From assembly GCF_000150275.1 (NCBI RefSeq), contig NW_002060943.1:2694462-2758461 (forward strand): DNA of 64,000 nt, read 5' to 3'. The notes under the pieces were generated by a model. That model was not told the DNA's origin and searched no databases. It saw only the letters and a list, made by a program, of their open reading frames with translations. Positions 47,634 through 64,000 of this stretch are shown in pieces. A program made the position numbers and the translations under genes. The stretch comes from Trichoplax adhaerens (Eukaryota > Animalia > Placozoa). The stretch's first letter is position 1. Each line of letters begins with the position of its first letter.

Positions 47634-49575
47634 TTAAACTGGTACATATTTTTCCAACTTGGATGATTCATTAACACTCTTGACGATCAATGCTTCAAGC
47701 CTTTCCTGCACCTAATACAAGAACATTGAAAATTTACATCCTCTCTTAAATTAGGATCACATTTTCTTTGGAAGCACTTTTATAAAATTTGAAATATTTA
47801 CTTGAATGACAGCAGGTCTTTGCCTTACTATATCGGATAAACAAACTACTGCTAACTCTAATATTTTTTTCCTTGGTCGGCAGAACGTAGACTTTGTACA
47901 TTGCATTTTCCACGATATTCTCTTATCCTTCAACATTTTCCAGTTTTGATTTCTGGAACTAATCAAGTAATCCTTCTACAAAATAACATTTTATTCCATT
48001 TCACTCTCTTCGCCGAAATAACTGCCGTATTATATCAAAAAACATGATGTATTTTAATTATACCAGCAATGGTGGACGTCTGCCTTTTTCAAACACTTGC
48101 AGTCCGGAAGTTATTTCTAAACAAATCTGTTGAAATGGATAAATGAACTGAGTATCAAGGAACAGAGCAATAGCTTCCACACAAGGACATGTAGCAGACC
48201 TTATAAAACAACCACTTACTGCCCCAAAGCTGTATATATCATTGGATTTACGAATTATTCCAGCTAGAGCATCCTGACAGCTATATCCTATCTTTCCAAC
48301 ATGGCAAGGGATAGGAAATGTACTTCTATCAAGGTTCATTTTGTGAAGATTATAATCTAGACATCCATCGCTTAATTTCGCTTTAAGCGTTTCATCCAGT
48401 AAAATATTCTTACTAATTACACAAACAACGTTAGCTGTTGGATTTCTTGTAATCCTGCAATTGTACCTTTGATCTAATCTATCTACCTGGTTAAATTATT
48501 ATGGACCAATTGGCAATCATGAAGAAAAGCTAATCCATCGATAATGTTCTTCAATATTATCAATCTTTGCAGACAGCGAGGTACTGTGCTTTCCTAGAGG
48601 TAGTTTAAAGTTATCACTACATCAGCAATTTAGTTACAGAAAATTTGCATTAGTATACTGTATTAATATTGAGAGGGTTTGAAATTACCGAAGTAATTAA
48701 TAACTCTCGCAACGAAAACGGTAGATATTCCAGCAATAGACCTCCAAGAGATGGATGATATGAATGCAGCATCCGTAGATTATCATGTTTTAAGCTAACG
48801 TTGGAAAGATGAAATTCAATTTACTGCTGCTATTCTAATCATTAGTCTTAACCTTCATCGATGCAAGTGTTAGAAATACCTTAGCAGATATTTAAAAGTA
48901 TATCTTTTGTCCGTTAAGTATTCTTTCATCTAAAAGATATTGCATCGTAGCTTAGATATGATATCGAAGCGCTTCATTTTAAATTCTTGTAGCCATAACT
49001 AAGATAGAAGCCTAATCGAAAAAGTAACCTGCGGGTTCCATTTCTTAAATGCGTATGTGACATCGCTAATTGTTATCTGGTAAGTAGTGCTATAATATCC
49101 AGGTTTACAGGTGCCTACATCTAAAGCCTGCTGTATAGTCTGGATAAGCAATGTTCAAAACCAGAATCATCAGCACAATTTACATTAGATAAAGAAAGAG
49201 ATGATTCAATATTAGCCTCAAAGAACTTGATGTTAACAGTATTATAATTACATTAAATAGTTTACCGAATCTGATAGCATGGGCATAGAATAATATGGCA
49301 TTCCCGAGAATGGATATTTTCCCCCTTCCATAATGTTAATATAGACGTCATCGTGACCAGATTTATAACAGCACCATTCATCCAATTGACGTCGAAGGCA
49401 TGTCTAAATGAAATATGCGGAAATATTTGTATTGTGTAATAAAAAATTATTCATTATAGCCGATGTTATCTTTCATTTTTCAGTCGTGCAAGGCTTAATT
49501 AGTTCATTATCTTACCCAACATGAAATTTTTTCTTCCTGTAAATGGAAGTTAGGAACATCCTGGTCCGTCATTAT
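47634..49575 (-). CDS. IRAK/Pelle-like pseudokinase K1 (HNN/DGC)
   Basis: Exons 49516-49575 (or from ATG 49572), 49266-49403, 49029-49130 (YAFKK), 48880-48929, 48689-48794 (LKHDNL..LLLEYL), 48487-48593 (GLAFLH..LVHNNLTS), 48220-48412 (KNILLDETLKAKLSDGC..DIYSFGA), 48064-48126, 47802-47975 and 47634-47711. The frame is intact; the 5' end is uncertain. Confidence 0.8.
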
Positions 49576-52500
49576 CTATCCATTAGTATATCAATGCAAT
49601 AAAACTGCTGCTTCTTGAGATATTTCTTTTAATAACTGAGATTGAATATGGATGGTGCACTAGAGCACTTTATAGATTTATGAAATAATGATGAACTAAA
49701 AGGACCTGCTACTACTTGAGATATCGCTTCTAGTAACTGAGATTAAATGTGGATAGTGCACTAGAGCACTTTAAAGGTTTATGAGATAATGATAAAATTA
49801 ATTTATTTTTATAAAAATAAACTTTAATAAAGGTCAATATACATAGGATACCAAAAATACTGCTTTGGGTAGCAGTAAACACTACGGCTGTAATAGACTG
49901 AATTAGTATCGGTATCGGTATGAAATCTTTGCTTCAATTTTGAATAGAACAGCGCCTAGACCTGGTGATAGTCATTTCCTCTTGGTGTTTATTTTTATTA
50001 AGGAAAATAATTATGATGTCATATTCATAAAGTATCAGTAATGAGTAATAGAATTGGAATTGTAGCTTTCTGTGCAATCTGCTACGAAGAAATGGCTTTT
50101 GCTACAGATGTGTTTAGGTTAATTAATTAATTTACAAAATTCTCAAAATTTCATTATAAATTTTGGATCGCTTTCAGCATAAAGTCATTCTAGACATGAA
50201 AGTCTAATCAGTCTGTAATCAATTCATATTGTACCACTTTTCTAGCGATACCGATGAAAAGAGGCAACGGGATAGAGCAAATAAGCTATGTAAGCAGCCT
50301 CATTAACTCTACGGCTTAAATGCACCAATTAATTTTACCGGCGATTTTTGTTTATAATTATGCGGTGATATTTTCCCTTCATTTAGAATTTGCCCAAAAA
50401 TTAAGCTATAGCAGGCTCACAAATAAGCAAAGATTCTATTAAAGCAAAAGCAATCATCCCTGTTTTCTGATTTTACTACGCCATGCACACCAAATTTACT
50501 TCTACAACAAATAGAAGCATCCTCATGTCAAGAATCAGGGCATGATTACGAAGAGGTGCAAGAAAAATGACCAGTATACACCCTTACTATGTACTGATTT
50601 TACACCTGTCAGCTAGAAGAATGATCGTTAAAATTGTTGTCTATAGAGAAACCTTTGTATTAATGCAGCTTACAGTTAATAAAACACAATCCTTGTATAA
50701 TTGCATTATTTCTGTGAGAGTTTACACGAACACAGGTGTTAGCAATGAAAGGATGAAAATTACTACGACTTGCACCTTTGATTTCTAATTTGCTACAATT
50801 GGTAATAGCTTTTAAACTGCCCTAGTTTATCCTACTTTGTATCTACTATTTAGCGCTATGTAGACACTATGGATTTAGGAATCTTTAAAATAAGTTAGGC
50901 AAAGCTCACTAAAACTGCGGTATATCCATATCGGATTTCTAAATTCAATAGCGATCTATCAATAAAGCAGCTATGAGCTTCGAGGATAACACTATCCACC
51001 GACTTTACCCTTAAAAATGCCCAGGGACTACTACCAGCTAATTTTAGTACTTTTCCTCCAATTTTTACACTGTAGAAGTAGTATTATTTCCCATTTCTTT
51101 TCTTTTACATGAGGGGATGTAGATTGGGGAAAGTACAATAATTAGTCGGTATAAGTCTCTGAAAATACAGATAATAAGACACGATTGAAAACTTCATTTG
51201 CATGCTTCATAGTAATATGTACTATAGACCTAATTTTTAACCATTTATTCATCAGCTCAAACCGCTTAGCATAAGACTTTCCTTTAACAAACTCAATAAA
51301 GCTCAGAGTAGGTAATTATTCTTTATTATTAAAAATCTAAAAAATTGCACCAAAATGGACTTTTTAGAACTTATCGAGAGGTATCGCAGTTCTAGCACAT
51401 ATTCTAATAACGTATTAACCATTTTTGCACCATTAGATACATGTCATGATGAACACAATATTGAAAATTAAAGGCTTTCTAAGCCAAACGAAGACTACAG
51501 TACTAATGCAAGTAAATAAAAAATTTAAGTTGATTTCACACTCTTTTAGTGCTATCAAAATTACTGCGTTAAATAAGGTAAAGAGTAAACTGCACTATTC
51601 GTAAGTTTTGACGAGCTATAAAATTAAATCGATGTGATCATCATGCAAAATGATGTCATGCGTTACTTGGAATCCAAAAACTTATCATGAGCTTATAGGC
51701 TAACATGTATAGCGTAAATTAACATTAGATAGATTTCATTATGGAATTGTGAGTGCATTTGCATCATCAGGCATTTTCAGTTGCTTTATGCATATCCGTG
51801 CTGTTATTTCTGGAAAACATTCTTACGCAAATTGTTTAAGAATACTAATAAATTCTTGCACGCACGATTTAAATTCAAGAGCACGTTTAATATTTATATC
51901 TTTTTGCATTTATATAAGGAAATATTTAAACCAATTTACTCCAGCATATATAATAAAACGGCGAATAGTACAGCCAGATATTTCTCCAAATAATTTTCTA
52001 TCGTGAACGGTATAACCTCTCTAACAAGTATCTTACTTCGCAATACTTAGCATTGATTCAAATGAGAGATAATAAAATGTTATATAAGACAGCATATGGT
52101 TCGATATTTTTCCCAACAATTTTCTATCAAAAACAGAATGACCTCTGTAGTATGTATTTTACTTTGCAGGGTATATCATTGATTTAAAGAGGAAATATTG
52201 AAATATTATTAGTCTTAATGTTTTTCCAATTTTTTCTTAATAAAAATGTGATAGATCTCATAAATAGATATCATATATAAAATTGAATTAGGATAAAATG
52301 ACGGGCACCCAAGCTGAGATATGCGACATTATGGAGGAAATCTAATCGAATTTCGATGACCCATTGAATGAAACACCGAATTAATCCCAAATTTGATAAC
52401 TGATCAAGAATGGTAATATCAATAAGCACCGTTAGTAATTATGTTCCACTAGTATACAGTAATGAGCATTTACTCATTTGTGTCACTAAATTTCAGAATT

Positions 52501-54822
52501 TTAAATAGCAATTTTTCGTTCCATCGTATCAGATCTGTAAATAAGCTAGAATTATCTAATATGAAATAGGCTTGTACCATATATATTCAATCATGCTAAC
52601 TTATTTAACAGGTGTCGTTAACCTTTGCTCGTCGAGGGAATCCAAGCACGCAATTACCTATTATAAGAATTGAATAAAAATTAGCTCTTATTGTATGTTG
52701 CATTTACTATTATCAAGCATTAAATGTAGCCTGCCTTCTTCAGAGATAGCCTTATAGATGGTCGCTCTTGCAAACACCCAAAAGCTAAATTCTGTAGCGT
52801 TTTTTCAATATTATATGGCCAGTGAGCGTAGGGATCACGAGGAAATACACATTTATTCTCCTCACATACTCGGTAATACTGGACCTGAAGTATGAATAAG
52901 TAACTGTCTGATTACTAAAGAGTATCGAGTTTAGACGACAAAGTAAGACCAACATTAGCATTCGTTAAAGCAATATGATATCTTTAATATAATTAAACCA
53001 TTCAACTTATCATGTTTGATGAAAATATGTAGTCTTTTTTACATTTATAAACTAGACTTACCAGAGTTTGAAACCCTTGAAAAGGAGATAAATAAGGCCG
53101 GCCGGATAGAACTTCTAGCAGTACCTGCAATAATAATTTTCATTCACATCTTTTTAATCAAGAAGGACAGATCATGTCTTTAAAATTAGATTATACTCAT
53201 GTATTAAGAACAAATTTAGCTGCGGCTCCTATTAATAGCAATTGATACTAGTAACTTACAGATCCAAAGCCATAGACGTCATATCCTAGGGTTATTTCAC
53301 CGCGAAAAGCTTCAGGTGGTATTCGAGTATAGCCAAGACTGCCTTGTAAAATAGCAATCTCATCATCGAATTGATTTCTAGGAATGCGCGCCTTGGTTAA
53401 TTTTGATTGATCGAACTTGCCAATTTTAGCCACATAGTGGGAATCGAGTAGGATATTTTCTGTTCTGATATCGCCGTGAATTAATGACTTCAGGAAGGCA
53501 GAATGAAGATATTGAATTCCTTGAGCAGTCCCAAGGCAAATTTGCAGCCTATACCAGCAATTTAATTGCGGATTCTGCAATATATAAATAAATGATATCA
53601 TTTTAAGCCTATATATCCATCTAATGCTTTAAATGAACCATCGATCTTTTTTTACTGTTTCGAACCTGATCTTGTAAGTGTTGGCATAAATTGCCATTTT
53701 CTACGTATTCCATAATGTAGCATAGCTGATTGTCGATTTCAACACATTGATGAAACTGAATAACATTGCGATGCTTATATCTATCAAATTAATAAAGTGT
53801 AGTTATGGCTGTTTAGCGATCTGCTAAAAATAGAACCATTCTTTTGAATTCATATTTAATAACTAGTGTCTAACTTCAAAAATCTTAAACATTTCATGGG
53901 ATTTAGTGCTGAGCAATAAAGATATGATCATCGGACTAGTTGAATTAAAGCATTTACTTCAATTGTATTTGATTTAAAGAGCTTAGACTTTTCGTGAAAT
54001 GGAATGGTTACTAATATGTAATGCTTAATGATATAGTACTAACCGACGAAGAAATTGACTTTCTTTGGCGGCATTAACGGAAACCTGTATCGATATGATT
54101 AGATATTAATCAATGTGCAATGCTGTGATACTGAAATTGAGGCTGTAATATTATGAAGATAAACGACCTTCTCTTAAACTTAAAAAGCATTGCAGTACGG
54201 TAACGAAGATTAATTTACAAAGTAATTTAATACATTTCGCTAAGAAAATCTGGCAAGGAACGAATATTATCCTCGAAGATATAAGCGATACCGCTAGTTT
54301 ACAACTGCTTACGTTATATTTTGTCATTCTCTTAATGGCTACACGACCATATGCGCGAATTTGACACAGATAGATTTCACTAAATGTGCCTTGATTAACT
54401 CGATGTTTCGGAGCAAAGTTATTCGTTTGTTGGATAATCTCCTGTTGTGGTAGTCAATCAAGTAGTTTAAACGAAAATTAATTCTGGATAAAAAGGGATT
54501 GAAATTCACGAAGATCAGATTGCATAAGTACGGTACTTCTGAAATGATCGATAGAAAAAAAATACATTTTACCTGGACAGTATCCAAGTTTGCTCGCTTG
54601 ATTTTACTTAGGCGCTGATCAAAGGCAAAGTGATGATATTAATATAATTACATTAAATGTGATTGGCTATTTATCTTTAATTTCACTGGCATGGATTATA
54701 TGTAATCTTCTTATCCTATCCACCAGTTAAATATTTTAATTCTTTCTAGTTCCTACCATTTCTTTTCTTTTTTCATATATATTGATCACTTCCGTTTTCC
54801 AACAAGAGAACAAGCATCCCAT
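52501..54822 (-). CDS. N-myristoylated IRAK/Pelle/RLCK-like pseudokinase K2 (HGD/KFD)
   Basis: Exons 54790-54822 (MGCLFSCWKTE), 54573-54614, 54313-54441 (QTNNF..NQGTFSEIY..VAIK), 54044-54084, 53666-53780, 53260-53574 (IHGDIRTENILLD..AKIGKFD..PPE..DVYGFG), 53062-53124, 52735-52884, 52623-52657 and 52501-52534. Confidence 0.82.
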
Positions 54823-57800
54823 TTCCTTTTCGTTGGGAAAGATTAATTGTAAGAATACTAATTTCTAGAGTTCCTTCAAGAACTAATTTGGTTAGTTTGC
54901 TTTAAGCAGAGTTGCGAATGAATATCGCCGATCGCGTATAAAAGATTATTGAAATAATTTACTCTAGCGCATAGAACTTAAACGCTTTCTGCTACTCTTT
55001 GAACTATCTTACACGAACATTACCAGCCCATGCGCTGTTTCCAAAACTAATATAAATGAATGCTTTCCATCTTACTATCAATCCCTTAAATAATTTTGAG
55101 GTTATATAATGTAAGGTCATTACCAAACGGAATGTAGTCTTATATTAGCTTTAGCAGCAATCTTCAGCTTCATAGACTCTTTATATCATAAGAAAAGAAT
55201 TGTACTACCAACTCTTGGCATGAGGTACTTTGTTGTGATGACACGTTGCTAAGTAGCATCAATTCCTCGATGTAGCAAAGTATTCTTGCACACCTAGGTG
55301 TCTTTGCTATCATTCATTCCATCAGTTACTCATGGGACTTGCATTAAAAAATAACAATACTAAAGAGCTAAATATAACATTATAATTTACAATTTGTTGA
55401 TCGCGATCATATCAAAATCTTTCTATTACATCTCTTTACTAATGTTGATGCACGTCATCCGTGAATGGGGCCCATTTTATTTGTCAAGAAGCGTAATCTT
55501 TGCTGACGGTTACATCATATCTACCTGTACTCCAAATTTATTAATATTTTCCTCAGTTCTGTTTCTTTAATTCTATTGGAATTGAATGTACTAATAACTA
55601 CTTTCATTACTGCATGAACACGATTTTGGGAACTTTTTATTCAAATGTATTTGTTTAAGCAATAACATTAAGGCAAGATTTAAATTAATACTCAAGATGC
55701 ATCATTACCCTTTATCGATGACGTCCGGTTTAAATTAATTATGTTTACATACAATACATAAGAGATACAAATTTATATAGTTGGACTATATTACGTAAAT
55801 ACTGTCGTTAAGGCGTCTCATAACGAATGAACTTTTGTTAGATAATAATAAGTTTCGATTCAATAGTCAACAAACATGTTAAAAAAATTTTTTGGCTTGA
55901 ACAGACTTACATATATATGTTAACATATTATTACCTCTGTAACGTAATTAATGGTTAGACATACATGTATTATAAAAATTTTCTGATCAATTTATCTTGC
56001 TGTTGAAAGTAAATGGGTAAAAATTAGCAATTTCTTGCAGCTGGTTGGGCTAGCTTCAACAAATAAATTCTTAGTTTATGCTAAGTAAGAATGTTAGCAG
56101 CTACGTTTATTTCATTTTGGGGAAAAGAATAATTGATTTGAATAATTAGATAGAGTTTCAGATTATTAATGACCGCTATAATTCTGTTGGATGAGACTGT
56201 AATAGAGATTGCAATTTTACTGTAACATTAGAATGAAGGAAGCAAAGTTACTAAGTAGATCAATGCCGGTGTATTAATGTGAATGATTACTTACAAAAAT
56301 TAAATTGCTCTGGCATAGATATTCATTTTTCGGTTGTATTATTCATCAATCTGTTTGAAATAAAAGTAACCTATGAGTGTAAAAGATACAAAGATTCTTT
56401 TAATCAATAAAAGAAATTTAATATTCATTTTATCAGATAAAGTTTACATGCAATAGGCATATACAATCTTTAATTTTGAATTCTACTAAAATATCTGATA
56501 CTAAATTTATTAAACCTTTGCATCAACAAATGGCCATTAGGTACGAGAAGTAGCCTAAAATTTGACTCGCTTGTCCACAGGATTTGTAACATTTAATCTA
56601 ATATAGAATAGTTTAAAATATTGCCAAGAGCTAGTGTTAATAATCAATTTAGTACCTGTCACAGAAACTCAGAAATCATACTGCGAGAGCACAAAAGCTC
56701 TTACCTACGAAAATTGCTTCCTATATTATGTATCATGTTTATACCGTGCCATTTTACTACGACATTGCCTAAATTAAGTAGTTCCGTTTCGTAAAATATC
56801 CAAGACTACTTTGAAGTTGTTTTAAGTGCAATCTTGATAAGTAAAACTGCCAAACGAGTTTTTTATTTCCATCATTCATATTGTAATATTAAAATTTTTT
56901 TATTTACTTACTGCATTAAAGGCAATTACGATACGATTAAGATACTTTTAACATAAATTCGATGGAATGTTACAGGTATAAGTATGATTTTATCATTACT
57001 GTTTAATTTTGGATTGAGATTGTCTAGAATAGATTCTTCTAATTCATCATGATTTGCCTGCTTCTTAAAGTTTTATCTTTAATTAGAAATATTTTATCCT
57101 AAAGCATATCAATTTCCTACTTAAAATTTAAAGCTAACTATCGATATCATCAACTATCATCAATGTCGTTTCAATCAGAAGAATTGGCGCTTAAGCATTA
57201 TTACAATTTTAAATTATATTAAAATTATATCTGATCGATCTCGTTTATGCTCTAATTTTAGATTCTTGCAATAAAACAAAATTCCTATCCTGTTCATCAA
57301 TCAACTAACATAAATGTTAAACTTATACAGCAACTTTAATGAATTTGTTGATTCGATTGGTTCTGTTACTATCAGCTCAATTTTTTTGGTTGTACTTATT
57401 TTTTTTAAAGATTAACAATAAGTAAAACAATTTTCTACCTCTTTATGGGCAGTCTCTAGTTGAAAGGTTTTAGTTTACAAGGGCGATATGGAGTGAGTGA
57501 TACAGCAAATATTTGATCATAATGATAGCTATATTTGATTGTGTTGGTAGCGATATTTGATATAGTTAAAGTTTCTAAGAATAGGTATTATCGTAGTGCT
57601 AATATTAGATTGCTAATTACTATATTATAAATTGGTGACGACTAGTATTAGCCAGTTGACTTGTTATGGTACAGTATTTATGTGACATGATATACTGTTG
57701 TTATGAAGATACCTAACACCGAAAGATACTGCACATTAATAGAAGAGTTGTGATATTTCAAGCAGATTGATTCAGATTGTAGGAGATGATGATGATCTAT

Positions 57801-60020
57801 TTAAGCAAAGTTATTCTGTTTGATGACTAAAGTCTGATTGTAGCTAATTATGTTATCGTACATGGATTTAACGAAATGTGTTTAAGAACTACGGAGATGA
57901 GCTTACGTTAGAGGTTTGACTTAACTTTGAGCTCAGAATATTTCATACTAGATTCATGAAGCAATCAATTATTGCTCTACTATCCCTAAACGTTATAATT
58001 GTGATGGAGGGTTCGATATCTCGGAGGATTGAGATTTAGTTGCCACTAACAATTAGTACACTAAAGGTTGCTTAAAAATTATACTTTATTTTAAGTAGTA
58101 AATTAAGTACAGTGAGGTAGTTACGGTAGATCAACGTGCAAGCTGCCGTGAGTAACATGTGAAGCCTAACCAGGAAACTAACGATTTTTGAGGTGGAAAT
58201 TAGCGGTATGTATAGTTTTAAAGATAGAGCACATGCAAAGAATAGGATTGTAGAATTAGATACAACATGTACCATAACAGGTTACAACATAGCTGATGAT
58301 CATAGCAAGCAGCGAGTACTGTAATACTAAATACAGTAGCCTATATATGAATGTGAAGTAAGCGGAATGTAAATATGTCTAAATATAAGAGCAATACAAC
58401 AAGTCTATATTTAAGGGTAGAATATAGTTACAGCATGTTCTAAATACACTACAATAATAAAGTCTTTATAGAAAATTTCATTTGACTACGACACTTTATT
58501 TGTGAGATACTTTTATTACACCACGCCAATTATTATGAGTATCTATCCTACCTCTTGTTAATAATGAAATCATTGTAGGGGTTCAAATTTCAAAATTATA
58601 CCGTAAGTAATCGTCTTTCTGAGCGCTGGTTAGAGTACTGTGCTAATAGTTTAATACTAACATGTTAGATTATTCTTACTCAATCCGACTGTCAACAATC
58701 TGGTTAAAAGACATGATCGGAATGTATGCTTTTATAAGAGTCTTAATCAATTTTACCCATATTGGGCTGGTCTTTAATAGCTCTTATGACATCATATGAC
58801 TGACATGTGCTAAGTTGAATATACTCATATAGAAATCATTCTAAAATTTCATCCGTATAAATAAACTGCTTTGTTTAAAATAAGGTATTAAAGCCTCACT
58901 ACTAGGCTAGTGCAGTTGGTATTTATGAAAATACAAGGATCTTTGACTGTTGGTATCTGTAACTACGTTTAAATCTCCATCTCAAAGAATACTGAACTAA
59001 ATTTCTTATTTCCCCAAATCTAGTACACTTGACTGCACGACTAATTGATATTCAACTGTAAGTACAAAGATTGTAAAGAGGACCAATAAGTAAATCAAAG
59101 TACTATCTGAATACAACAGTATACTGCAATTAATGAATCTTTAAAAGGTGTCGTTAGTTCGATTAAATCTAAATTATGTTGACTAGATATGTAACCTCTA
59201 CCGATAGTTTTCATACGATAACTTGAATAGGTAAATGCTGATATCATCTTGTATGCTTCAATAGATAACTGCATACTTTTGCAGAACCATCTAAATACTG
59301 ATGGAAATTTTTTGCGCAGATTCATTATAAGTTGACTGATTTGTAATATAGTTTCGGTTAATAGTATAGTCTGAGGAAATACATGTAGTGCACTGTGATG
59401 TCTTGATGATGGGAGATTATCAGAAAGAGAGCCATACCGTAGGTAAAATTCGGAAGGACAGTCCTGATAATGGGCTTATAGTATATATTTCCTTCCACAA
59501 TTCTAATTTTTTTGTTATGAGTTTGTAATGACCACTTTCAAGATAGCCTAAAGATCAGTATAATAGTGTAGATAACTATGCAGCATTACAGCATAGAGAA
59601 CTTATGTTATTACTCATTATTTACGACAATCATTATTCCATATGGTTGGCTAACCTCATAAACATAACTCCTCGTTTACTTTCAGTTACCCTCTATTCAC
59701 CTAATTAGTCTTCCAGTCATTCCTTTATATGGTTAAACGATCAATTTGAAGTCATAGTTTAATTTAATTTTAATATTTTTTTCTTAGCTATATTAGCTGA
59801 ACTTATGTTAAAAATATTTCAAGAGTTGAGAAAGCAATTTTTTACTTATAACTACATTATTTTAAAATAGTTGTACACATGTTTTATCGTAGGGCTGCAT
59901 TTTTATCGTTAGCTTCGTTGCAGTATTGGGTGCATAATCTATAGATTTTTTTTTTTGGAAAGACCGAATTTGATAGCATATTTAGAGTATATTGGAGTAT
60001 TGTGTCGAATAGTAAAAAGA

Positions 60021-62411
60021 ATGGGAGGTATTTGTTCGTGCCGTAAGAATGAGGTAATTAATTAGTAGAACATTGCTGATTATTTCTTGGATAGTTGTTA
60101 GTTGAAAATGATCATTATTGTTGGTACATAAAGTAATTCCTTTATTAATTGACTTTGACATATCAATTTTATTTTAATTTCAACCTATGATTTAACCTAA
60201 CTAAGTATGGTAATATGAATGTATATATATGAATTATAATAATAAGGAGCAACTACTGAGGGCGGAGTCTTACCTTGGAAACCCCAATCTTGAGATACAA
60301 GCTGAGGTAAATTATTCTGTCACTAGTTAATTATGGGACTATCACAGACTTCTCTTTTGATAAAGGATAAAGTAGAGTATTCAGCTCTTCTTAGTTGCTA
60401 TTGTCAAATTTATTTTAGTATATAGGCAGAAATCTACTACGACACAAATTTTTAATGTACTTTACTATTCATCAATCAAGATACATTTACAATGTGACGA
60501 AGACACTATTTGAACGAGTCCTTTACAAGTCATTAAGGATGGATTATTAGTATAACAAAATGTTAGAAGGAAGTCTTTATTTTTAATAATTGCTAATTAT
60601 TCTAGGATATAAAAATGGCAACAAATAATTTCTCGGCTGAGAATAGAATTGGTGCAGGCGCCTTTGGTGAAGTTTATCAAGCTGATCTGCACTCATTTGG
60701 CGTTGTTGCGGTTAAACGAATTAAGCAAAAATTTGTAAGTAAGTTTTTAACGGCATTACAATAGCGTATTTACTAGTTTTTTATGCAGTCAAGGCAATTA
60801 TGATGCAGATCAATTTCATTAATTTATCTATTTTTGACGATTCATTTAATATGTATCTCGATGATACGTTACAAATATGGTGGTAAAAGATATCAGTAAA
60901 TGATCGACGAGAATGTCAGCTTCTATTTCAGTAAGTAGCAACTACTTGTGTGTTTTTCCGCATCGTATTAATGAATTTAAGATGGATTATAGATGAAAGA
61001 TTGCGATAATAATCGTTTACTTCTAGATATACACATATTAATCTCATACAGTTGCATACCGGCTTGGTTGTTGATGGCCACTTTTGCATGGTGATGGAGT
61101 TTATGATCAATGGCAGTTTAAGATCAAGATTGCAAGCGAAGGTATGCTGATTCAATAAAAGTCCGGTTCTTCATTTGAGTAATTTCTTATTTCTAGGTTA
61201 ATGTAACTTCTATTAATGACCGTATTATGATATTGTAGTTGTACTAAAGTCAGAAATTTAGAATAGAATTGACAACAATTACATAAAAAATTTTGTAATA
61301 ATCAATTACTTCATCGATACAAGCAAATAATTCGTACTCGAATTTAGCGAATTATAATTGCTAAATATCTATAAATTTCAGGATGAAAATCTGAATTATT
61401 TAGTCAGATTACGAATTTGTAGAGGCATAGCCAATGGAATCAATTATCTCCATTCAGCATTTAGGACATATCTTGTGCATAGGGACATTAAGAGTGATAA
61501 CGTATTGCTTTCGGAAGATTACACTCCTAAAATATGTGATTTTGGCCTAGTAAAAATTTTCTCTTCAAAAAGGAATAATAATGTTAATAGTGCTGCCATG
61601 ACTGAAAATATATGCGGAACTCAAGCTTACTTACCCCCAGAAGCATTTGATGGAATAATATCACGGCGTCTTGATGTGTATAGTTATGGAACTGTACGTG
61701 CAGTATATTGATTTAGCAATGCATTAATAAATTTGCAGAGGCTCATAATTGAGATTGCTCTTTATCCCGAAGGTATTACTGGAGATTATATCAGGGAAAT
61801 CACCGCTCTTTAGTAATAAAGAAGGAATTCCATATTTGGTAAATCTATATTTATGCAGTATTTTAAGGCCATCTTACCAGCAGCATGGATGCACTTATAA
61901 TACTCGTATTATACACGAACCGATATTATTTTTAGATTCAACTACAAGATATTTCGAGATTAATTTAATGATTGATGCTTATGTTAGTTCGATTACAGAC
62001 TTAACTGGCTAATTTCCATCAGATATAGTTTTCTTTATAAATTACAATGATGAACGAATTTAGATATGACATATTATTATGGTAAATTGACTATCTCACA
62101 CTGCTGACGATACCCTGTTTATCATTAAAAATCGCTACTAGGCGGACTACTTTCTCTACTGTTACATACACCAAATATCAGCCTTTCCTATCGATAAAAA
62201 GGCCAACTGGCCTAAAGATTATACAAAGGAATTAATGAAGCTAGCCAATTGGTGTCTAAGACATAAATATGAAGATCGACCATATATGAAGGAGGTTAGT
62301 AGGGAGACTATCCAAGGTTTGATTTTGCCGTAATGATTACTAGATGAGCTTATATTATCTATTTATAAGGTGATTGAAAAGCTTTCAGAAATCGCTTCTA
62401 AGACAAAATGA
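60021..62411 (+). CDS. N-myristoylated IRAK/Pelle/RLCK-like active RD kinase K3
   Basis: Exons 60021-60053 ([11 protein letters not shown]), 60247-60306, 60606-60734 ([25 protein letters not shown]), 60890-60930, 61027-61141, 61382-61693 ([30 protein letters not shown]), 61773-61838, 62142-62294 and 62370-62411. Confidence 0.88.
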
Positions 62412-63144
62412 TTATCATGGTAATTATAAAAAATGAATGATTGCAGTAGCTGAAGAATTTACTCGAATAATTAAAATTACTAAAGAATACAAAATGATCT
62501 TTAAATCATTCAAGATTGAAATAATTATGATTTTTTTGTCATATATCAGCGGTGCAAATAGCTTCCGAAGTGTGGCAATTAATTAAATATTGTGTCATCA
62601 ATGATTTACTTTTATCGAGTAATTAATCATATGTTAACACCTAGCCATTAATAAACTATTATTAAATGTCGTAGAAAGTGTGTTGTGATTGTTGCAATAT
62701 TCAATAAGTAGACTTGGCTATGAATTTATTATTGCTTGCACCAATGAAGTTTGTGAGGCTATATAAAAGCCTCAAAGTTCTTAAGAATCAAAATTTTATT
62801 CTAAAAGCTACTTATTAAAATGACCGATTAAACTCACAACTTGCAATCTACTTCTAACAACTGATAACATTCTGCTATCGACTAACTTGTTAAATTCCTC
62901 AATCAACGTGAGTATTCTATCGTCTAAGACTCGAATCTGAGTTGGTAGATTAAAGAGTGCGTAGAGTTAGTTGCTTAGATAGTTAAGACTACTTTTGACG
63001 AAAGAATCTAATTAATTTTTGTCGTACAATCTCGGTTATGACATCGAGATAACGTAATTAATGAAGAGCTATGATAGAAACTGCATCGATTCAATGATAC
63101 GATGTGATATATTTTAATCGCTAAGTAGTAACTGAGGGTATAAA

Positions 63145-63915
63145 TTAGTCTTGGCTACTCTTTTGTTTCCATTTATCCAATACTTGCTTACATTTGGTAA
63201 ACACCTAAAAGTCAGGCAGGTAAATGGATTTGATGAGTAAAGTTGCTTTGTGATTTCCTGTAGAAGCCTTATTTTAATATTAATCAAGTCATACCAGTTC
63301 AATTTGGGGTCGTTCTTTGGCATTTTCAGCAAGGCACGCAGCAGATAAAGTAAGTAGTACTTTTCTTGGGCGATAAATATTAAGATAGTTAATATTTTTC
63401 TTCCATTTTATTCCTATATCCTTGAGGTATTTCCAGTTTTTGTAAGAAGTATTCAACAGATAATCTTTCTATTGATGAGATGAAATACGATATGCAATAA
63501 ATTAATATAACTAAGATAAAGACGGAGATGTACAAAAAATTTGTTAATTTTGCAAACACAATGAAAATTAAAAGAACTAACCAGTTGAGTTGGTTTCCTA
63601 TTGCTATCATAAATCGCCTTCCCAGAAACTACAACTAAACAGATCTAATTGAAATATGAAGCAAAAAGGAGTATTGATTAGATCTTATTACGTGTAATTC
63701 AATATATTCAAAGCTTAATCGCATTTCTTACTGCTCCAAAGCTGTATATATCGTTAGAATAATCGATCATTCCACGTAGGGCTTCCTCGCAAAAATAGCC
63801 AATCTTATCGACTTTGGAAGATTGAGCTAGCTGAATGTTCTTAGAACAATTTACCTGTATACATCCATCGGCCAGTTTTGCTGTTCCATTTTCGTTTATC
63901 AAAACATTTGTGCTG
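63145..63915 (-). CDS. 3' part of IRAK/Pelle-like pseudokinase K4 (DGC), paralog of K1; 5' end runs off the window
   Basis: Exons ~63732-63912 (NVLINENGTAKLADGC..IGYFCEEA..NDIYSFGA), 63582-63644, 63295-63468 (KDYLLNTSYKNWKYLKD..RPRK..ACL..ERP) and 63145-63204. Exon sizes and sequence parallel K1. Confidence 0.8.
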
Positions 63916-64000
63916 TTAGATAAAAGGAAAATTTTAATTATCCTACTAAATTCAAGTTATGGAGGAAATGATCTGGTTTACAGTAATCCACGCTAAATAG

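What the first reader, a model, noticed from the sequence alone, without database searches (positions are those of the whole stretch)
47634..63915. Cluster of death-domain-less IRAK/Pelle kinases: one active kinase and three pseudokinases, resembling plant RLCK kinase/decoy modules
Seen in sequence: four spliced kinase genes arranged K1(-) K2(-) K3(+) K4(-), with shared intron positions in the kinase domain. Only K3 keeps all catalytic motifs. K2 and K3 have only ~25-30 residues before the kinase domain, and no death domain is visible in K1 either. Established: animal IRAK/Pelle kinases are recruited through a death domain, whereas plant RLCKs of the same superfamily lack it. Plant RLCK pseudokinases (ZED1/ZRK) occur in clusters and act as adaptors or decoys for NLR immunity. 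Inference: this may be an undescribed, MyD88-independent, membrane-tethered kinase/pseudokinase signalling or immune-sensing system in an early-branching animal.
Basis: partly seen in the sequence, partly recalled or inferred. Interest (0 to 1): 0.88.

Follow-up and report, generated by a model that had tools for sequence, protein, structure and literature searches.

The report
Placozoan IRAK-like kinase and pseudokinase cluster
This stretch of the Trichoplax adhaerens genome holds four genes of an 11-gene cluster of IRAK-type signalling kinases that lack the usual death domain; the cluster was published in 2019, and what this work adds is that half its genes are conserved, expressed "dead" kinases sitting beside lipid-anchored, apparently active ones.

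Summary
The genome is Trichoplax adhaerens. Four spliced kinase genes lie at 47634-64000 in the order K1(-) K2(-) K3(+) K4(-). All eight kinase-domain introns are at shared positions. Only K3 keeps every catalytic motif.

The four genes are the left end of an 11-gene array of about 64 kb with two subfamilies.
- **Type B** (K2, K3, K5, K7, K10, K11) starts with an MGxxCxC acylation-type exon in five of six genes (no such exon found for K11). Motifs are intact in all but K2.
- **Type A** (K1, K4, K6, K8, K9) has an N-terminal cysteine cluster in four of five. HRD has become HNN (HND in K6, HNC in K9), and DFG has become DGC in all five.

Both types fall inside the IRAK/Pelle/plant-RLK clade (support 100/99). 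IRAK4 is the closest solved relative of both. No death domain is detectable.

RNA contigs show K3 and K4 spliced. Type A paralogs have dN/dS of about 0.3, so they are maintained pseudokinases and not dead genes.

"Undescribed" is wrong. Kamm et al. 2019 (PMC6321704) reported this cluster of death-domain-less IRAK-related kinases. They did not describe the pseudokinase subfamily, the acylation motifs, the convergent B/A gene pairs or a missed αC micro-exon in K3.

The NLR-decoy idea has no support: no NLR, TIR or death-domain gene is nearby. Other notes of this scan cover the same stretch.

The parts
47634..49572 (-). K1, a type A pseudokinase gene (358 aa, 10 coding exons). It has a Cys-rich N-terminus of about 65 aa (CWTC...WCC) followed by a kinase fold.
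   Evidence: The spliced alignment of P0270 is 358/358 identical. Pfam finds Pkinase only. There are no internal stops.
48495..48503 (-). K1 catalytic loop: HNN in place of HRD
48361..48369 (-). K1: DGC in place of DFG
52735..54822 (-). K2, a degenerate type B gene. Exon 1 is at 54790-54822. The kinase exons are 54313-54444, 54044-54084, 53666-53780, 53260-53574, 53062-53124 and 52735-52884. The last small exon was not modelled.
   Evidence: The H2 annotation has a 275-aa gene here. The frame is intact.
54790..54822 (-). K2 first exon of 33 nt, encoding MGCLFSCWKTE (myristoylation/palmitoylation-type motif)
53470..53478 (-). K2: HGD in place of HRD. The DFG position reads KFD at 53410-53418, within GKFD at 53410-53421.
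60021..62411 (+). K3, a type B gene with all catalytic motifs. The RNA-corrected product is 316 aa in 9 coding exons (TRIADDRAFT_51558).
   Evidence: RNA splice joints; the aligner gives the same exons; identity of the gene
60021..60053 (+). K3 first exon of 33 nt, encoding [11 protein letters not shown]. An in-frame TAG lies at 59910-59912 upstream.
   Evidence: RNA contigs are contiguous across 59810-60128.
60890..60930 (+). K3 micro-exon of 41 nt ([14 protein letters not shown]) carrying the αC glutamate. It is absent from both public gene models.
   Evidence: Joints 60734>60890 and 60930>61027 occur in runs X14, X16 and X17. P0004 and P0151 lack it.
61478..61486 (+). K3 HRD; DFG is at 61538-61546. 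Some RNA contigs of another strain carry a 1-nt insertion behind 61487.
63145..64000 (-). K4, the 3' part of a type A pseudokinase gene (337 aa in all). Exons in the window are 63145-63204, 63295-63468, 63582-63644 and 63732-63912. Six more exons lie beyond the window, up to the ATG about 2.7 kb past its end.
   Evidence: RNA joints (CT..AC). My model matches P0273 at 335 of 337 residues.
63861..63869 (-). K4: DGC in place of DFG. Its HNN lies in the next exon, beyond the window.
58050..58460 (.). Interspersed repeat of about 410 bp in the K2-K3 intergenic region. It is not part of the genes.
   Evidence: At least 40 genomic copies at 80-91% identity. RNA contig depth is high here.
62770..63020 (.). 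Inverted-repeat (MITE-like) element of about 250 bp between the 3' ends of K3 and K4
   Evidence: 75 matches to its two arms, at about 35 or more places in the genome. Opposite-strand joints appear.

Best explanation
The interval is the left end of a placozoan-specific tandem array of 11 genes, about C1414:2,742,100-2,806,200. All encode death-domain-less IRAK/Pelle/RLK-family proteins with one common exon-intron plan, in two old subfamilies.

Type B proteins begin with an 11-12-residue MGxxCxC exon in five of six genes and a short linker. They carry the family's TNNF motif and, in five of six genes, a complete catalytic apparatus. K2 has lost the glycine loop and the DFG aspartate.

Type A proteins have an N-terminal cysteine cluster in four of five genes. 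Their kinase fold has lost the catalytic aspartate (HRD to HNN/HND/HNC) and reads DGC for DFG. It keeps the β3 lysine, the catalytic-loop asparagine and the DFG aspartate. This is the same kind of lesion as in IRAK2 or HER3.

Shown: the structure, the family placement, the absence of a death domain, transcription and splicing of K3 and K4, and long-term purifying selection on both types.

Inferred: type B proteins are lipid-anchored cytoplasmic kinases built like plant RLCKs, and are recruited at membranes without death-domain assembly. Type A proteins are S-acylated, non-catalytic scaffolds or allosteric partners of type B. The convergent B(+)/A(-) arrangement seen three times in a row (K3/K4, K5/K6, K7/K8) prompts this pairing idea. 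The pathway they serve is unknown; it may be the IRAK step of the placozoan TLR-like pathway.
For: - Organism and genes: TRIADDRAFT_51558/51560; H2 orthologs; assembly size and window position.
- Array of 11 genes and their order.
- Shared introns, including the αC micro-exon (41 nt in B; 50 or 53 nt in A).
- Family placement: the careful ML tree puts Trichoplax B (8 genes), Trichoplax A (9 genes, own clade 100/99), animal IRAK4/Pelle and plant RLK/RLCK in one clade with support 100/99. TGFβR-like, Mos-like and other kinases fall outside.
- PDB ranking for type B: IRAK4 1.4e-39, plant RLKs 1e-38 to 1e-33, IRAK1 4e-33, CTR1 7e-31, ZAK 2e-27.
- PDB ranking for type A: IRAK4 4e-18, next family 6e-13.
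- The TNNF motif before the G-loop is shared with IRAK4-like and plant RLK sequences.
- No death domain: no Pfam Death hit at E<=1 within the array; no Death_2 hit anywhere in the genome; Pkinase only in eight full-length models; N-terminal regions of 31 to about 65 residues; an in-frame stop upstream of the K3 ATG inside contiguous RNA.
- Acylation motifs. The best plant hits start MGCGCFG or MPCCCCCF with the G-loop at about residue 55.
- Expression: GT..AG joints for all K3 kinase exons and three K4 introns in RNA runs.
- Selection: dN/dS 0.27-0.37 for type A and 0.22-0.37 for type B, with codon position 2 changing least and position 3 most. HNN (or HEN in one) also occurs in four dispersed type A-like genes.
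- Prior report of the cluster.
Against: - Function is inference only. No acylation, kinase-activity, binding or expression-pattern data were obtained.
- RNA was laid on only 6 kb, so transcription of K1 and K2 is untested.
- The type B and type A trees for the three pairs are not congruent, but both are weakly supported. Co-duplication of pairs is therefore not shown.
- K4 differs from another strain by 8 non-synonymous and 1 synonymous listed changes. That fits relaxed or diversifying selection better than the 0.3 long-term average.
- K3 carries a frameshift allele in some RNA contigs, so the "active" member may be dispensable.
- K4 starts MGE, which the usual myristoylation pattern disfavours, and K8 starts ME. 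No N-terminal cysteine cluster was seen in the K6 model, and no first exon was found for K11.
- The outgroups did not include RIPK, MLK or RAF sequences.
Confidence: 0.65

Rival explanations
1. An immune kinase/decoy module as in plants. On this reading, type A (and K2) pseudokinases are baits or adaptors, monitored by an NLR-like sensor. They report pathogen interference with the active type B kinases, as ZED1/ZRK and PBL2 do with ZAR1.
For: - Clustered, expanding pseudokinases sit beside active RLCK-like kinases.
- K4 shows 8 non-synonymous against 1 synonymous listed difference between strains, concentrated in the activation-segment and C-lobe loops.
- K3 has a presence/absence-like null allele in some RNA contigs.
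- The plant precedent is established (e.g. PMC6634424, listed).
Against: - No NACHT, TIR_2 or Death hit lies within or beside the array. The nearest NACHT hits on this contig are about 2.5 Mb (E 1.6e-7, with internal stops) and 3.6 Mb away.
- The long-term dN/dS of 0.3 equals that of the active paralogs.
- The strain differences are few, taken from an incomplete list, and equally consistent with relaxed constraint.
- No binding or induction data exist.
Confidence: 0.07
2. K1, K2 and K4 are decaying duplicates (pseudogenes, or genes on the way to loss) with no function of their own.
For: - Catalytic motifs are lost.
- K2 has a long branch: 1.14 against 0.15-0.55 for the other cluster type B genes.
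- K4 has diverged quickly in recent time, and one strain carries a 2-nt deletion near its C-terminus.
- K1 and K2 transcription is untested.
Against: - All have intact reading frames and canonical splice sites across 270-358 codons.
- HNN (HND in K6, HNC in K9) and DGC are conserved in five cluster paralogs that are 40-61% identical, and HNN or HEN occurs in four dispersed relatives.
- dN/dS is 0.27-0.37, with codon position 2 changing less than position 1 and position 1 less than position 3. K2 shows the same pattern.
- K4 is spliced in three RNA runs.
- K1 is identical over 358 codons between the two sequenced strains.
Confidence: 0.08
3. Type A proteins are not dead. They are atypical kinases, or nucleotide-dependent switches, that use a non-canonical catalytic arrangement.
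For: They keep the β3 lysine (AFKKW), the catalytic-loop asparagine (HNNLKxxN) and the aspartate of DGC. Pfam Pkinase covers positions 9-256 of 263.
Against: The catalytic-base aspartate is replaced in all nine family members. The glycine loop is degenerate and the αC glutamate is not conserved.
Confidence: 0.1
4. These are ordinary IRAKs whose death-domain exons were missed by annotation and by my models.
For: - Death domains are very numerous in this genome (125 six-frame hits).
- Public models of these genes are imperfect (the K3 micro-exon was missed; several models are truncated).
Against: - No Death hit (E<=1) in the roughly 125 kb examined, and no Death_2 hit genome-wide.
- First exons begin with ATG and are conserved among paralogs.
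- An in-frame stop lies upstream of the K3 ATG, within RNA contigs that show no upstream splice.
- Kamm et al. reached the same conclusion with RNA-guided models.
Confidence: 0.03

Closest known systems
IRAK-related kinase cluster of Trichoplax sp. H2 (TrispH2_009235-009242; Kamm et al. 2019, BMC Genomics 20:5, PMC6321704)
   Same: It is the same locus: H1 and H2 are 99.885% identical over 21.7 kb. [quoted passage not shown] Its Table S2 already splits them into two OrthoMCL groups, which correspond to my types B and A.
   Different: The paper and its supplements do not mention pseudokinases. They also do not mention catalytic-motif loss, acylation motifs, the B/A gene-pair arrangement or the K3 micro-exon.
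Animal IRAK family (IRAK4, IRAK1, and the pseudokinases IRAK2 and IRAK3) and Pelle/Tube
   Same: - IRAK4 is the closest solved relative of both types.
- They share a clade with invertebrate IRAK4/Pelle-like proteins.
- Type B shares the TNNF motif.
- The family combines active kinases with pseudokinases. From my own knowledge, the catalytic Asp is Asn in IRAK2.
   Different: There is no death domain, so no Myddosome-type assembly is possible through that route. They have lipid-anchor-type N-termini instead. Type A is a separate, long-branched, placozoan-only clade and is not an ortholog of IRAK2 or IRAK3.
Plant receptor-like cytoplasmic kinases (e.g. CRPK1-like, BIK1/PBL)
   Same: - They are the best non-placozoan database hits (35-38% identity).
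- The architecture is the same: MGC/Cys-rich start, short linker, TNNF motif, RLK/Pelle kinase, nothing else.
   Different: The plant sequences form their own clade (99/94), which excludes the Trichoplax genes. The likeness in architecture may be ancestral or convergent. No partner receptor kinase is known in placozoans.
ZED1/ZRK pseudokinases with PBL2 and the NLR ZAR1 (plants)
   Same: Clustered RLCK-type pseudokinases sit next to active RLCK-type kinases.
   Different: No NLR linkage or interaction evidence exists here. Type A is conserved at dN/dS of about 0.3.
HER3-type pseudokinases (catalytic Asp to Asn, allosteric activator of an active paralog)
   Same: The lesion class is the same in type A: the catalytic Asp has become Asn, while the β3 Lys and the metal-binding residues are kept. 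The comparison with HER3 rests on my own knowledge.
   Different: It is a different kinase family. Heterodimerisation with type B is not shown.

Membership tests
IRAK/Pelle/RLK kinase family (TKL group) | The kinase domain groups with IRAK/Pelle and plant RLK sequences to the exclusion of other kinases | tested here: met
   In the careful ML tree, 36 sequences (Trichoplax B, Trichoplax A, animal IRAK4/Pelle-like, plant RLK/RLCK) form a clade with support 100/99. TGFβR-like, Mos-like, Ank-kinase and four more distant kinases fall outside. Caveat: no RIPK, MLK or RAF references were in the tree. The PDB E-value ranking covers those families.
IRAK/Pelle/RLK kinase family (TKL group) | A conserved (A/V)T(N/D)xF motif just before the glycine loop | tested here: met
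   Type B has ATNNFS (K3, K5) and variants in K2, K7, K10 and K11. The same motif occurs in IRAK4-like, Pelle-like and plant sequences and is absent from an outgroup. It is not recognisable in type A.
Animal IRAK/Pelle proper | An N-terminal death domain that recruits the kinase to MyD88/Tube | tested here: not met
   No Death (PF00531) hit at E<=1 in the array, and no Death_2 (PF14786) hit in the genome. Pkinase only in the full-length models. The N-termini of 31 to about 65 residues are too short for a death fold.
Plant RLCK (architecture) | An RLK/Pelle kinase domain with no ectodomain or transmembrane segment, often with an N-terminal myristoylation/palmitoylation motif | tested here: met
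   Pkinase only. MGxxC[S/A]C-type first exons occur in K2, K3, K5, K7 and K10 and fit G-{EDRKHPFYW}-x(2)-[STAGCN]-{P}. The plant CRPK1-like hits start MGCGCFG. Acylation itself was not tested.
Plant RLCK (descent) | Nested within the plant RLK/RLCK radiation | tested here: not met
   The plant sequences are monophyletic (99/94) without the Trichoplax genes.
Pseudokinase | Loss of at least one of the β3 Lys, the HRD Asp or the DFG Asp | tested here: met
   K1 and K4 read HNN and DGC. K2 reads KFD for DFG and has a degenerate glycine loop. Inactivity was not assayed.
ZED1/ZRK-type NLR-guarded decoy system | Functional or physical coupling of the pseudokinase to an NLR sensor | not testable with these tools
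   Only linkage could be checked, and there is no NACHT, TIR_2 or Death hit near the array.

The most novel reading that the evidence does not exclude
Placozoans run a plant-like signalling layer. Lipid-anchored, death-domain-less IRAK/Pelle kinases work in obligate pairs with a placozoan-specific family of Asp-to-Asn pseudokinases, and the two were amplified together as convergent gene pairs. The fast-changing pseudokinase loops and the null alleles reflect a role in sensing microbes or symbionts. This would be either the pre-death-domain state of the IRAK/Pelle/RLK family or a striking convergence with plant RLCK and decoy systems.
Probability: 0.12. Interest if true: 0.7.

Novelty: new member of a known kind. 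Interest (0 to 1): 0.35.

Why it matters
How early animals connect receptors to NF-κB-type signalling without a canonical IRAK is an open point, raised by Kamm et al. 2019. The present analysis gives that question concrete candidates:
- a set of probably membrane-anchored, active IRAK-family kinases;
- a conserved, expressed pseudokinase subfamily of nine genes, found in no other organism by the searches that were possible.

It also corrects the K3 gene model, which as annotated lacks the αC helix. If the pairs prove to be functional units, they would be a simple animal system for studying kinase/pseudokinase cooperation. They would also be a test case for whether the RLCK architecture predates the plant-animal split. 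As it stands, this refines a published observation and is not a new system.

Tried and rejected
- **Complex prediction** of K5 (P0152 28-313) with its neighbour K6 (P0271 66-342): the job came back "NOT FOLDED" for policy reasons.
- **dN/dS between T. adhaerens and Trichoplax sp. H2**: the two are 99.885% identical over 21.7 kb, too close to be useful.
- **Broad homolog search for type A**:
  - Exon-sized queries are blocked by the length filter.
  - An alignment of exon references under P0152 (A1, badly aligned) did retrieve the type A database proteins.
  - It found no non-placozoan type A relative, and a search with P0273 found only one weak ENA hit (6e-5) outside Trichoplax.
  - The word pre-filter limits what that blank means.
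- **Protein atlas** with a K1 frame returned only a generic "protein kinase".
- **Link to the LRR-GPCR-pseudokinase genes** noted elsewhere in this genome (s1-733971): tblastn of K3, K4, TGFβR-like, Mos-like and IRAK4-like sequences against C1414:12.738-12.758 Mb gave nothing below E 0.3. No link was found.
- **Rfam** on 47-64 kb found nothing.
- **Literature** searches for the gene identifiers and for "placozoa" plus "pseudokinase" found nothing relevant.
- **Congruence of the type B and type A trees** for the three convergent pairs is unresolved.
  - Searches used single exons by reference or database proteins.
  - The RNA-corrected 316-aa K3 product was therefore never searched as a whole.
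  - Exons were joined only inside scripts, from the files, for local alignment, trees and dN/dS.

Full report
**Identity of the sequence.** The window is G000:C1414:2694462-2758461 of a 105.6-Mb, 1414-contig assembly. The K3 product is TRIADDRAFT_51558 of Trichoplax adhaerens, and its Trichoplax sp. H2 ortholog is RDD38101. The two strains are 99.885% identical over 21.7 kb of this locus.

**The observation.** Six-frame reading and Pfam on single exons show kinase exons for four genes in the order K1(-) K2(-) K3(+) K4(-). I wrote a protein-to-genome spliced aligner. With the K5 protein P0152 as guide, it reproduced every K3 junction seen in RNA, so I trust its models.
- K1 (47634-49572, 10 exons) translates 358/358 identical to P0270.
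- My hand-built K4 model (337 aa) matches P0273 at 335 of 337 residues.
- All eight introns inside the kinase domain sit at the same alignment positions and phases in both subfamilies. This includes a micro-exon for the αC helix, 41 nt in type B and 50 or 53 nt in type A.
- In the window, only K3 has the full set GAGAFG, VAVK, αC Glu, HRD and DFG. K2 reads NQGTFS, HGD and KFD. K1 and K4 read HNN and DGC.

**Extent of the cluster.** Searching the rest of the contig shows seven more paralogs just beyond the window. The order is K1(A-) K2(B-) K3(B+) K4(A-) K5(B+) K6(A-) K7(B+) K8(A-) K9(A-) K10(B-) K11(B-). The array spans about 64 kb and contains three consecutive convergent B(+)/A(-) pairs. K5, K7, K10 and K11 also have complete catalytic motifs. 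"One active kinase" is therefore true only inside the window. Both subfamilies also have dispersed members: two type B-like and four type A-like genes on contigs C1410 and C1371. The type A-like ones again read HNN, or HEN in one case.

**RNA evidence.** One 6-kb stretch (58001-64000) could be laid on contigs of three RNA-seq runs and one probable RNA run.
- K3 shows GT..AG joints for every kinase exon. Three runs use the micro-exon 60890-60930 ([14 protein letters not shown]). The public models P0004 and P0151 skip it and so lack the αC helix. The annotated form appears only as a minor joint.
- K4 shows three CT..AC joints and a fourth splice leading out of the window. It is transcribed and spliced.
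- These contigs come from another strain, labelled "organism B".
  - In three of the four runs, K3 carries a T insertion behind 61487 that would give HRDI-stop.
  - K4 differs at 3.1% of exon bases, with 8 non-synonymous and 1 synonymous among the listed changes.
  - K3 differs at 0.85%. The lists are incomplete.

**Family.**
- The K3 catalytic exon, full-length K5 and full-length K4 all have IRAK4 as best solved relative: 7e-20, 1.4e-39 and 4e-18. Plant RLKs come next for type B. Nothing comes within five orders of magnitude for type A.
- In the 5.8-billion-protein search, K5 hits plant CRPK1-like RLCKs at 35-38% identity and mollusc IRAK4-like proteins at 36%.
- A careful ML tree puts both Trichoplax types in one clade (100/99) with animal IRAK4/Pelle-like and plant RLK/RLCK sequences. 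The order of the four subclades is unresolved. Type A sits on a long stem.
- Type B shares the pre-G-loop TNNF motif with IRAK4 and plant RLKs.

**Death domain and N-termini.**
- No Death hit at E<=1 lies in the array, although the genome has 125 such hits.
- Death_2, the type found in mollusc IRAK4-like proteins, is found nowhere in the genome.
- Eight full-length models give Pkinase only.
- Type B starts with a 33- or 36-nt exon: [44 protein letters not shown] or MGCLYSKKCNRK. This is a myristoylation-plus-palmitoylation type motif. The closest plant RLCKs start the same way.
- Type A N-termini carry cysteine clusters in K1, K4, K8 and K9 (TCCCF, TCCCSCW, CHGGCCPWLNC, CWTC..WCC). None was seen in the K6 model.
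- Membrane tethering is an inference from sequence.

**Are the degenerate genes alive?**
- All have open frames and canonical splice sites.
- Unsaturated type A pairs give dN/dS of 0.27-0.37, the same as type B at 0.22-0.37.
- K2 comparisons are saturated but keep the coding pattern across the three codon positions.

**What is known.** Kamm et al. 2019 wrote that Trichoplax has several IRAK-like genes, all without a death domain, and that many lie in a tight cluster of placozoan-specific paralogs. Table S2 lists TrispH2_009235-009242 in two orthogroups. The word "pseudokinase" does not occur in the paper or its supplements. I found no other paper on these genes. The core finding is therefore published. 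New here are:
- the pseudokinase subfamily;
- the acylation motifs;
- the pair arrangement;
- the micro-exon;
- the strain polymorphisms.

**The decoy idea.** No NACHT, TIR_2 or Death hit is near the array. The only hint in favour is the excess of amino-acid changes in K4 loops between strains, together with the K3 null allele. I rate the decoy reading at 0.07.

**Limits.**
Exons were searched singly by reference or through database proteins. Joins were made only inside scripts.
- The outgroup sampling lacks RIPK, MLK and RAF.
- Expression of K1 and K2, acylation, catalysis and binding are all untested.

Noticed in passing
window 60890-60930: Both public gene models of K3 (TRIADDRAFT_51558 and RDD38101) skip a 41-nt micro-exon that three RNA runs use. 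As annotated, the protein lacks the αC helix. The corrected product is 316 aa.
   Followed up: yes
window 61487: RNA contigs of runs X14, X17 and X12 carry one extra T inside the HRD-I codons of K3, giving HRDI-stop. It is absent in run X16 and in both sequenced genomes. It looks like a polymorphic null allele of the only "active" gene in the window.
   Followed up: partly
window 63295-63468 and 63732-63912: K4 exons differ from the other strain at 3.1% of bases, with 8 non-synonymous and 1 synonymous among the listed changes. These lie mostly in the activation-segment and C-lobe loops. K3 differs at 0.85%. A 2-nt deletion at 63165 in run X16 alters only the last few codons of K4.
   Followed up: partly
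window 58050-58460: An interspersed repeat of about 410 bp with at least 40 copies in the genome (80-91% identity). It has very high depth in the RNA contigs.
   Followed up: partly
window 62770-63020: An inverted-repeat (MITE-like) element of about 250 bp, found at about 35 or more places in the genome, lying between the 3' ends of K3 and K4. K3 and K4 contigs both run into it (K3 up to 62854; K4 down to 62776). The two 3' UTRs may therefore overlap, but chimeric contigs cannot be excluded.
   Followed up: partly
window 60419-60528: An alternative 110-nt exon between K3 exons 2 and 3, seen in one RNA run (X14). Its length is not a multiple of three, so it would break the frame.
   Followed up: no
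G000:C1410:4252004-4252843 (-): A TIR_2 hit (1.9e-22) lies directly beside a Death hit (3.7e-11) on the same strand. This is a MyD88-like gene, so a MyD88 adaptor exists although no IRAK with a death domain does.
   Followed up: no
L008-L013 (C1410:6.556-6.586 Mb, C1410:2.541-2.551 Mb, C1410:6.155-6.165 Mb, C1371:28-38 kb): Dispersed relatives of both subfamilies. Two are type B-like genes: one starts MGGISLCSG with HRD and DFG, and one starts MGNCQC with HRN. Four are type A-like genes with HNN or HEN and N-terminal CCCC-type clusters.
   Followed up: partly
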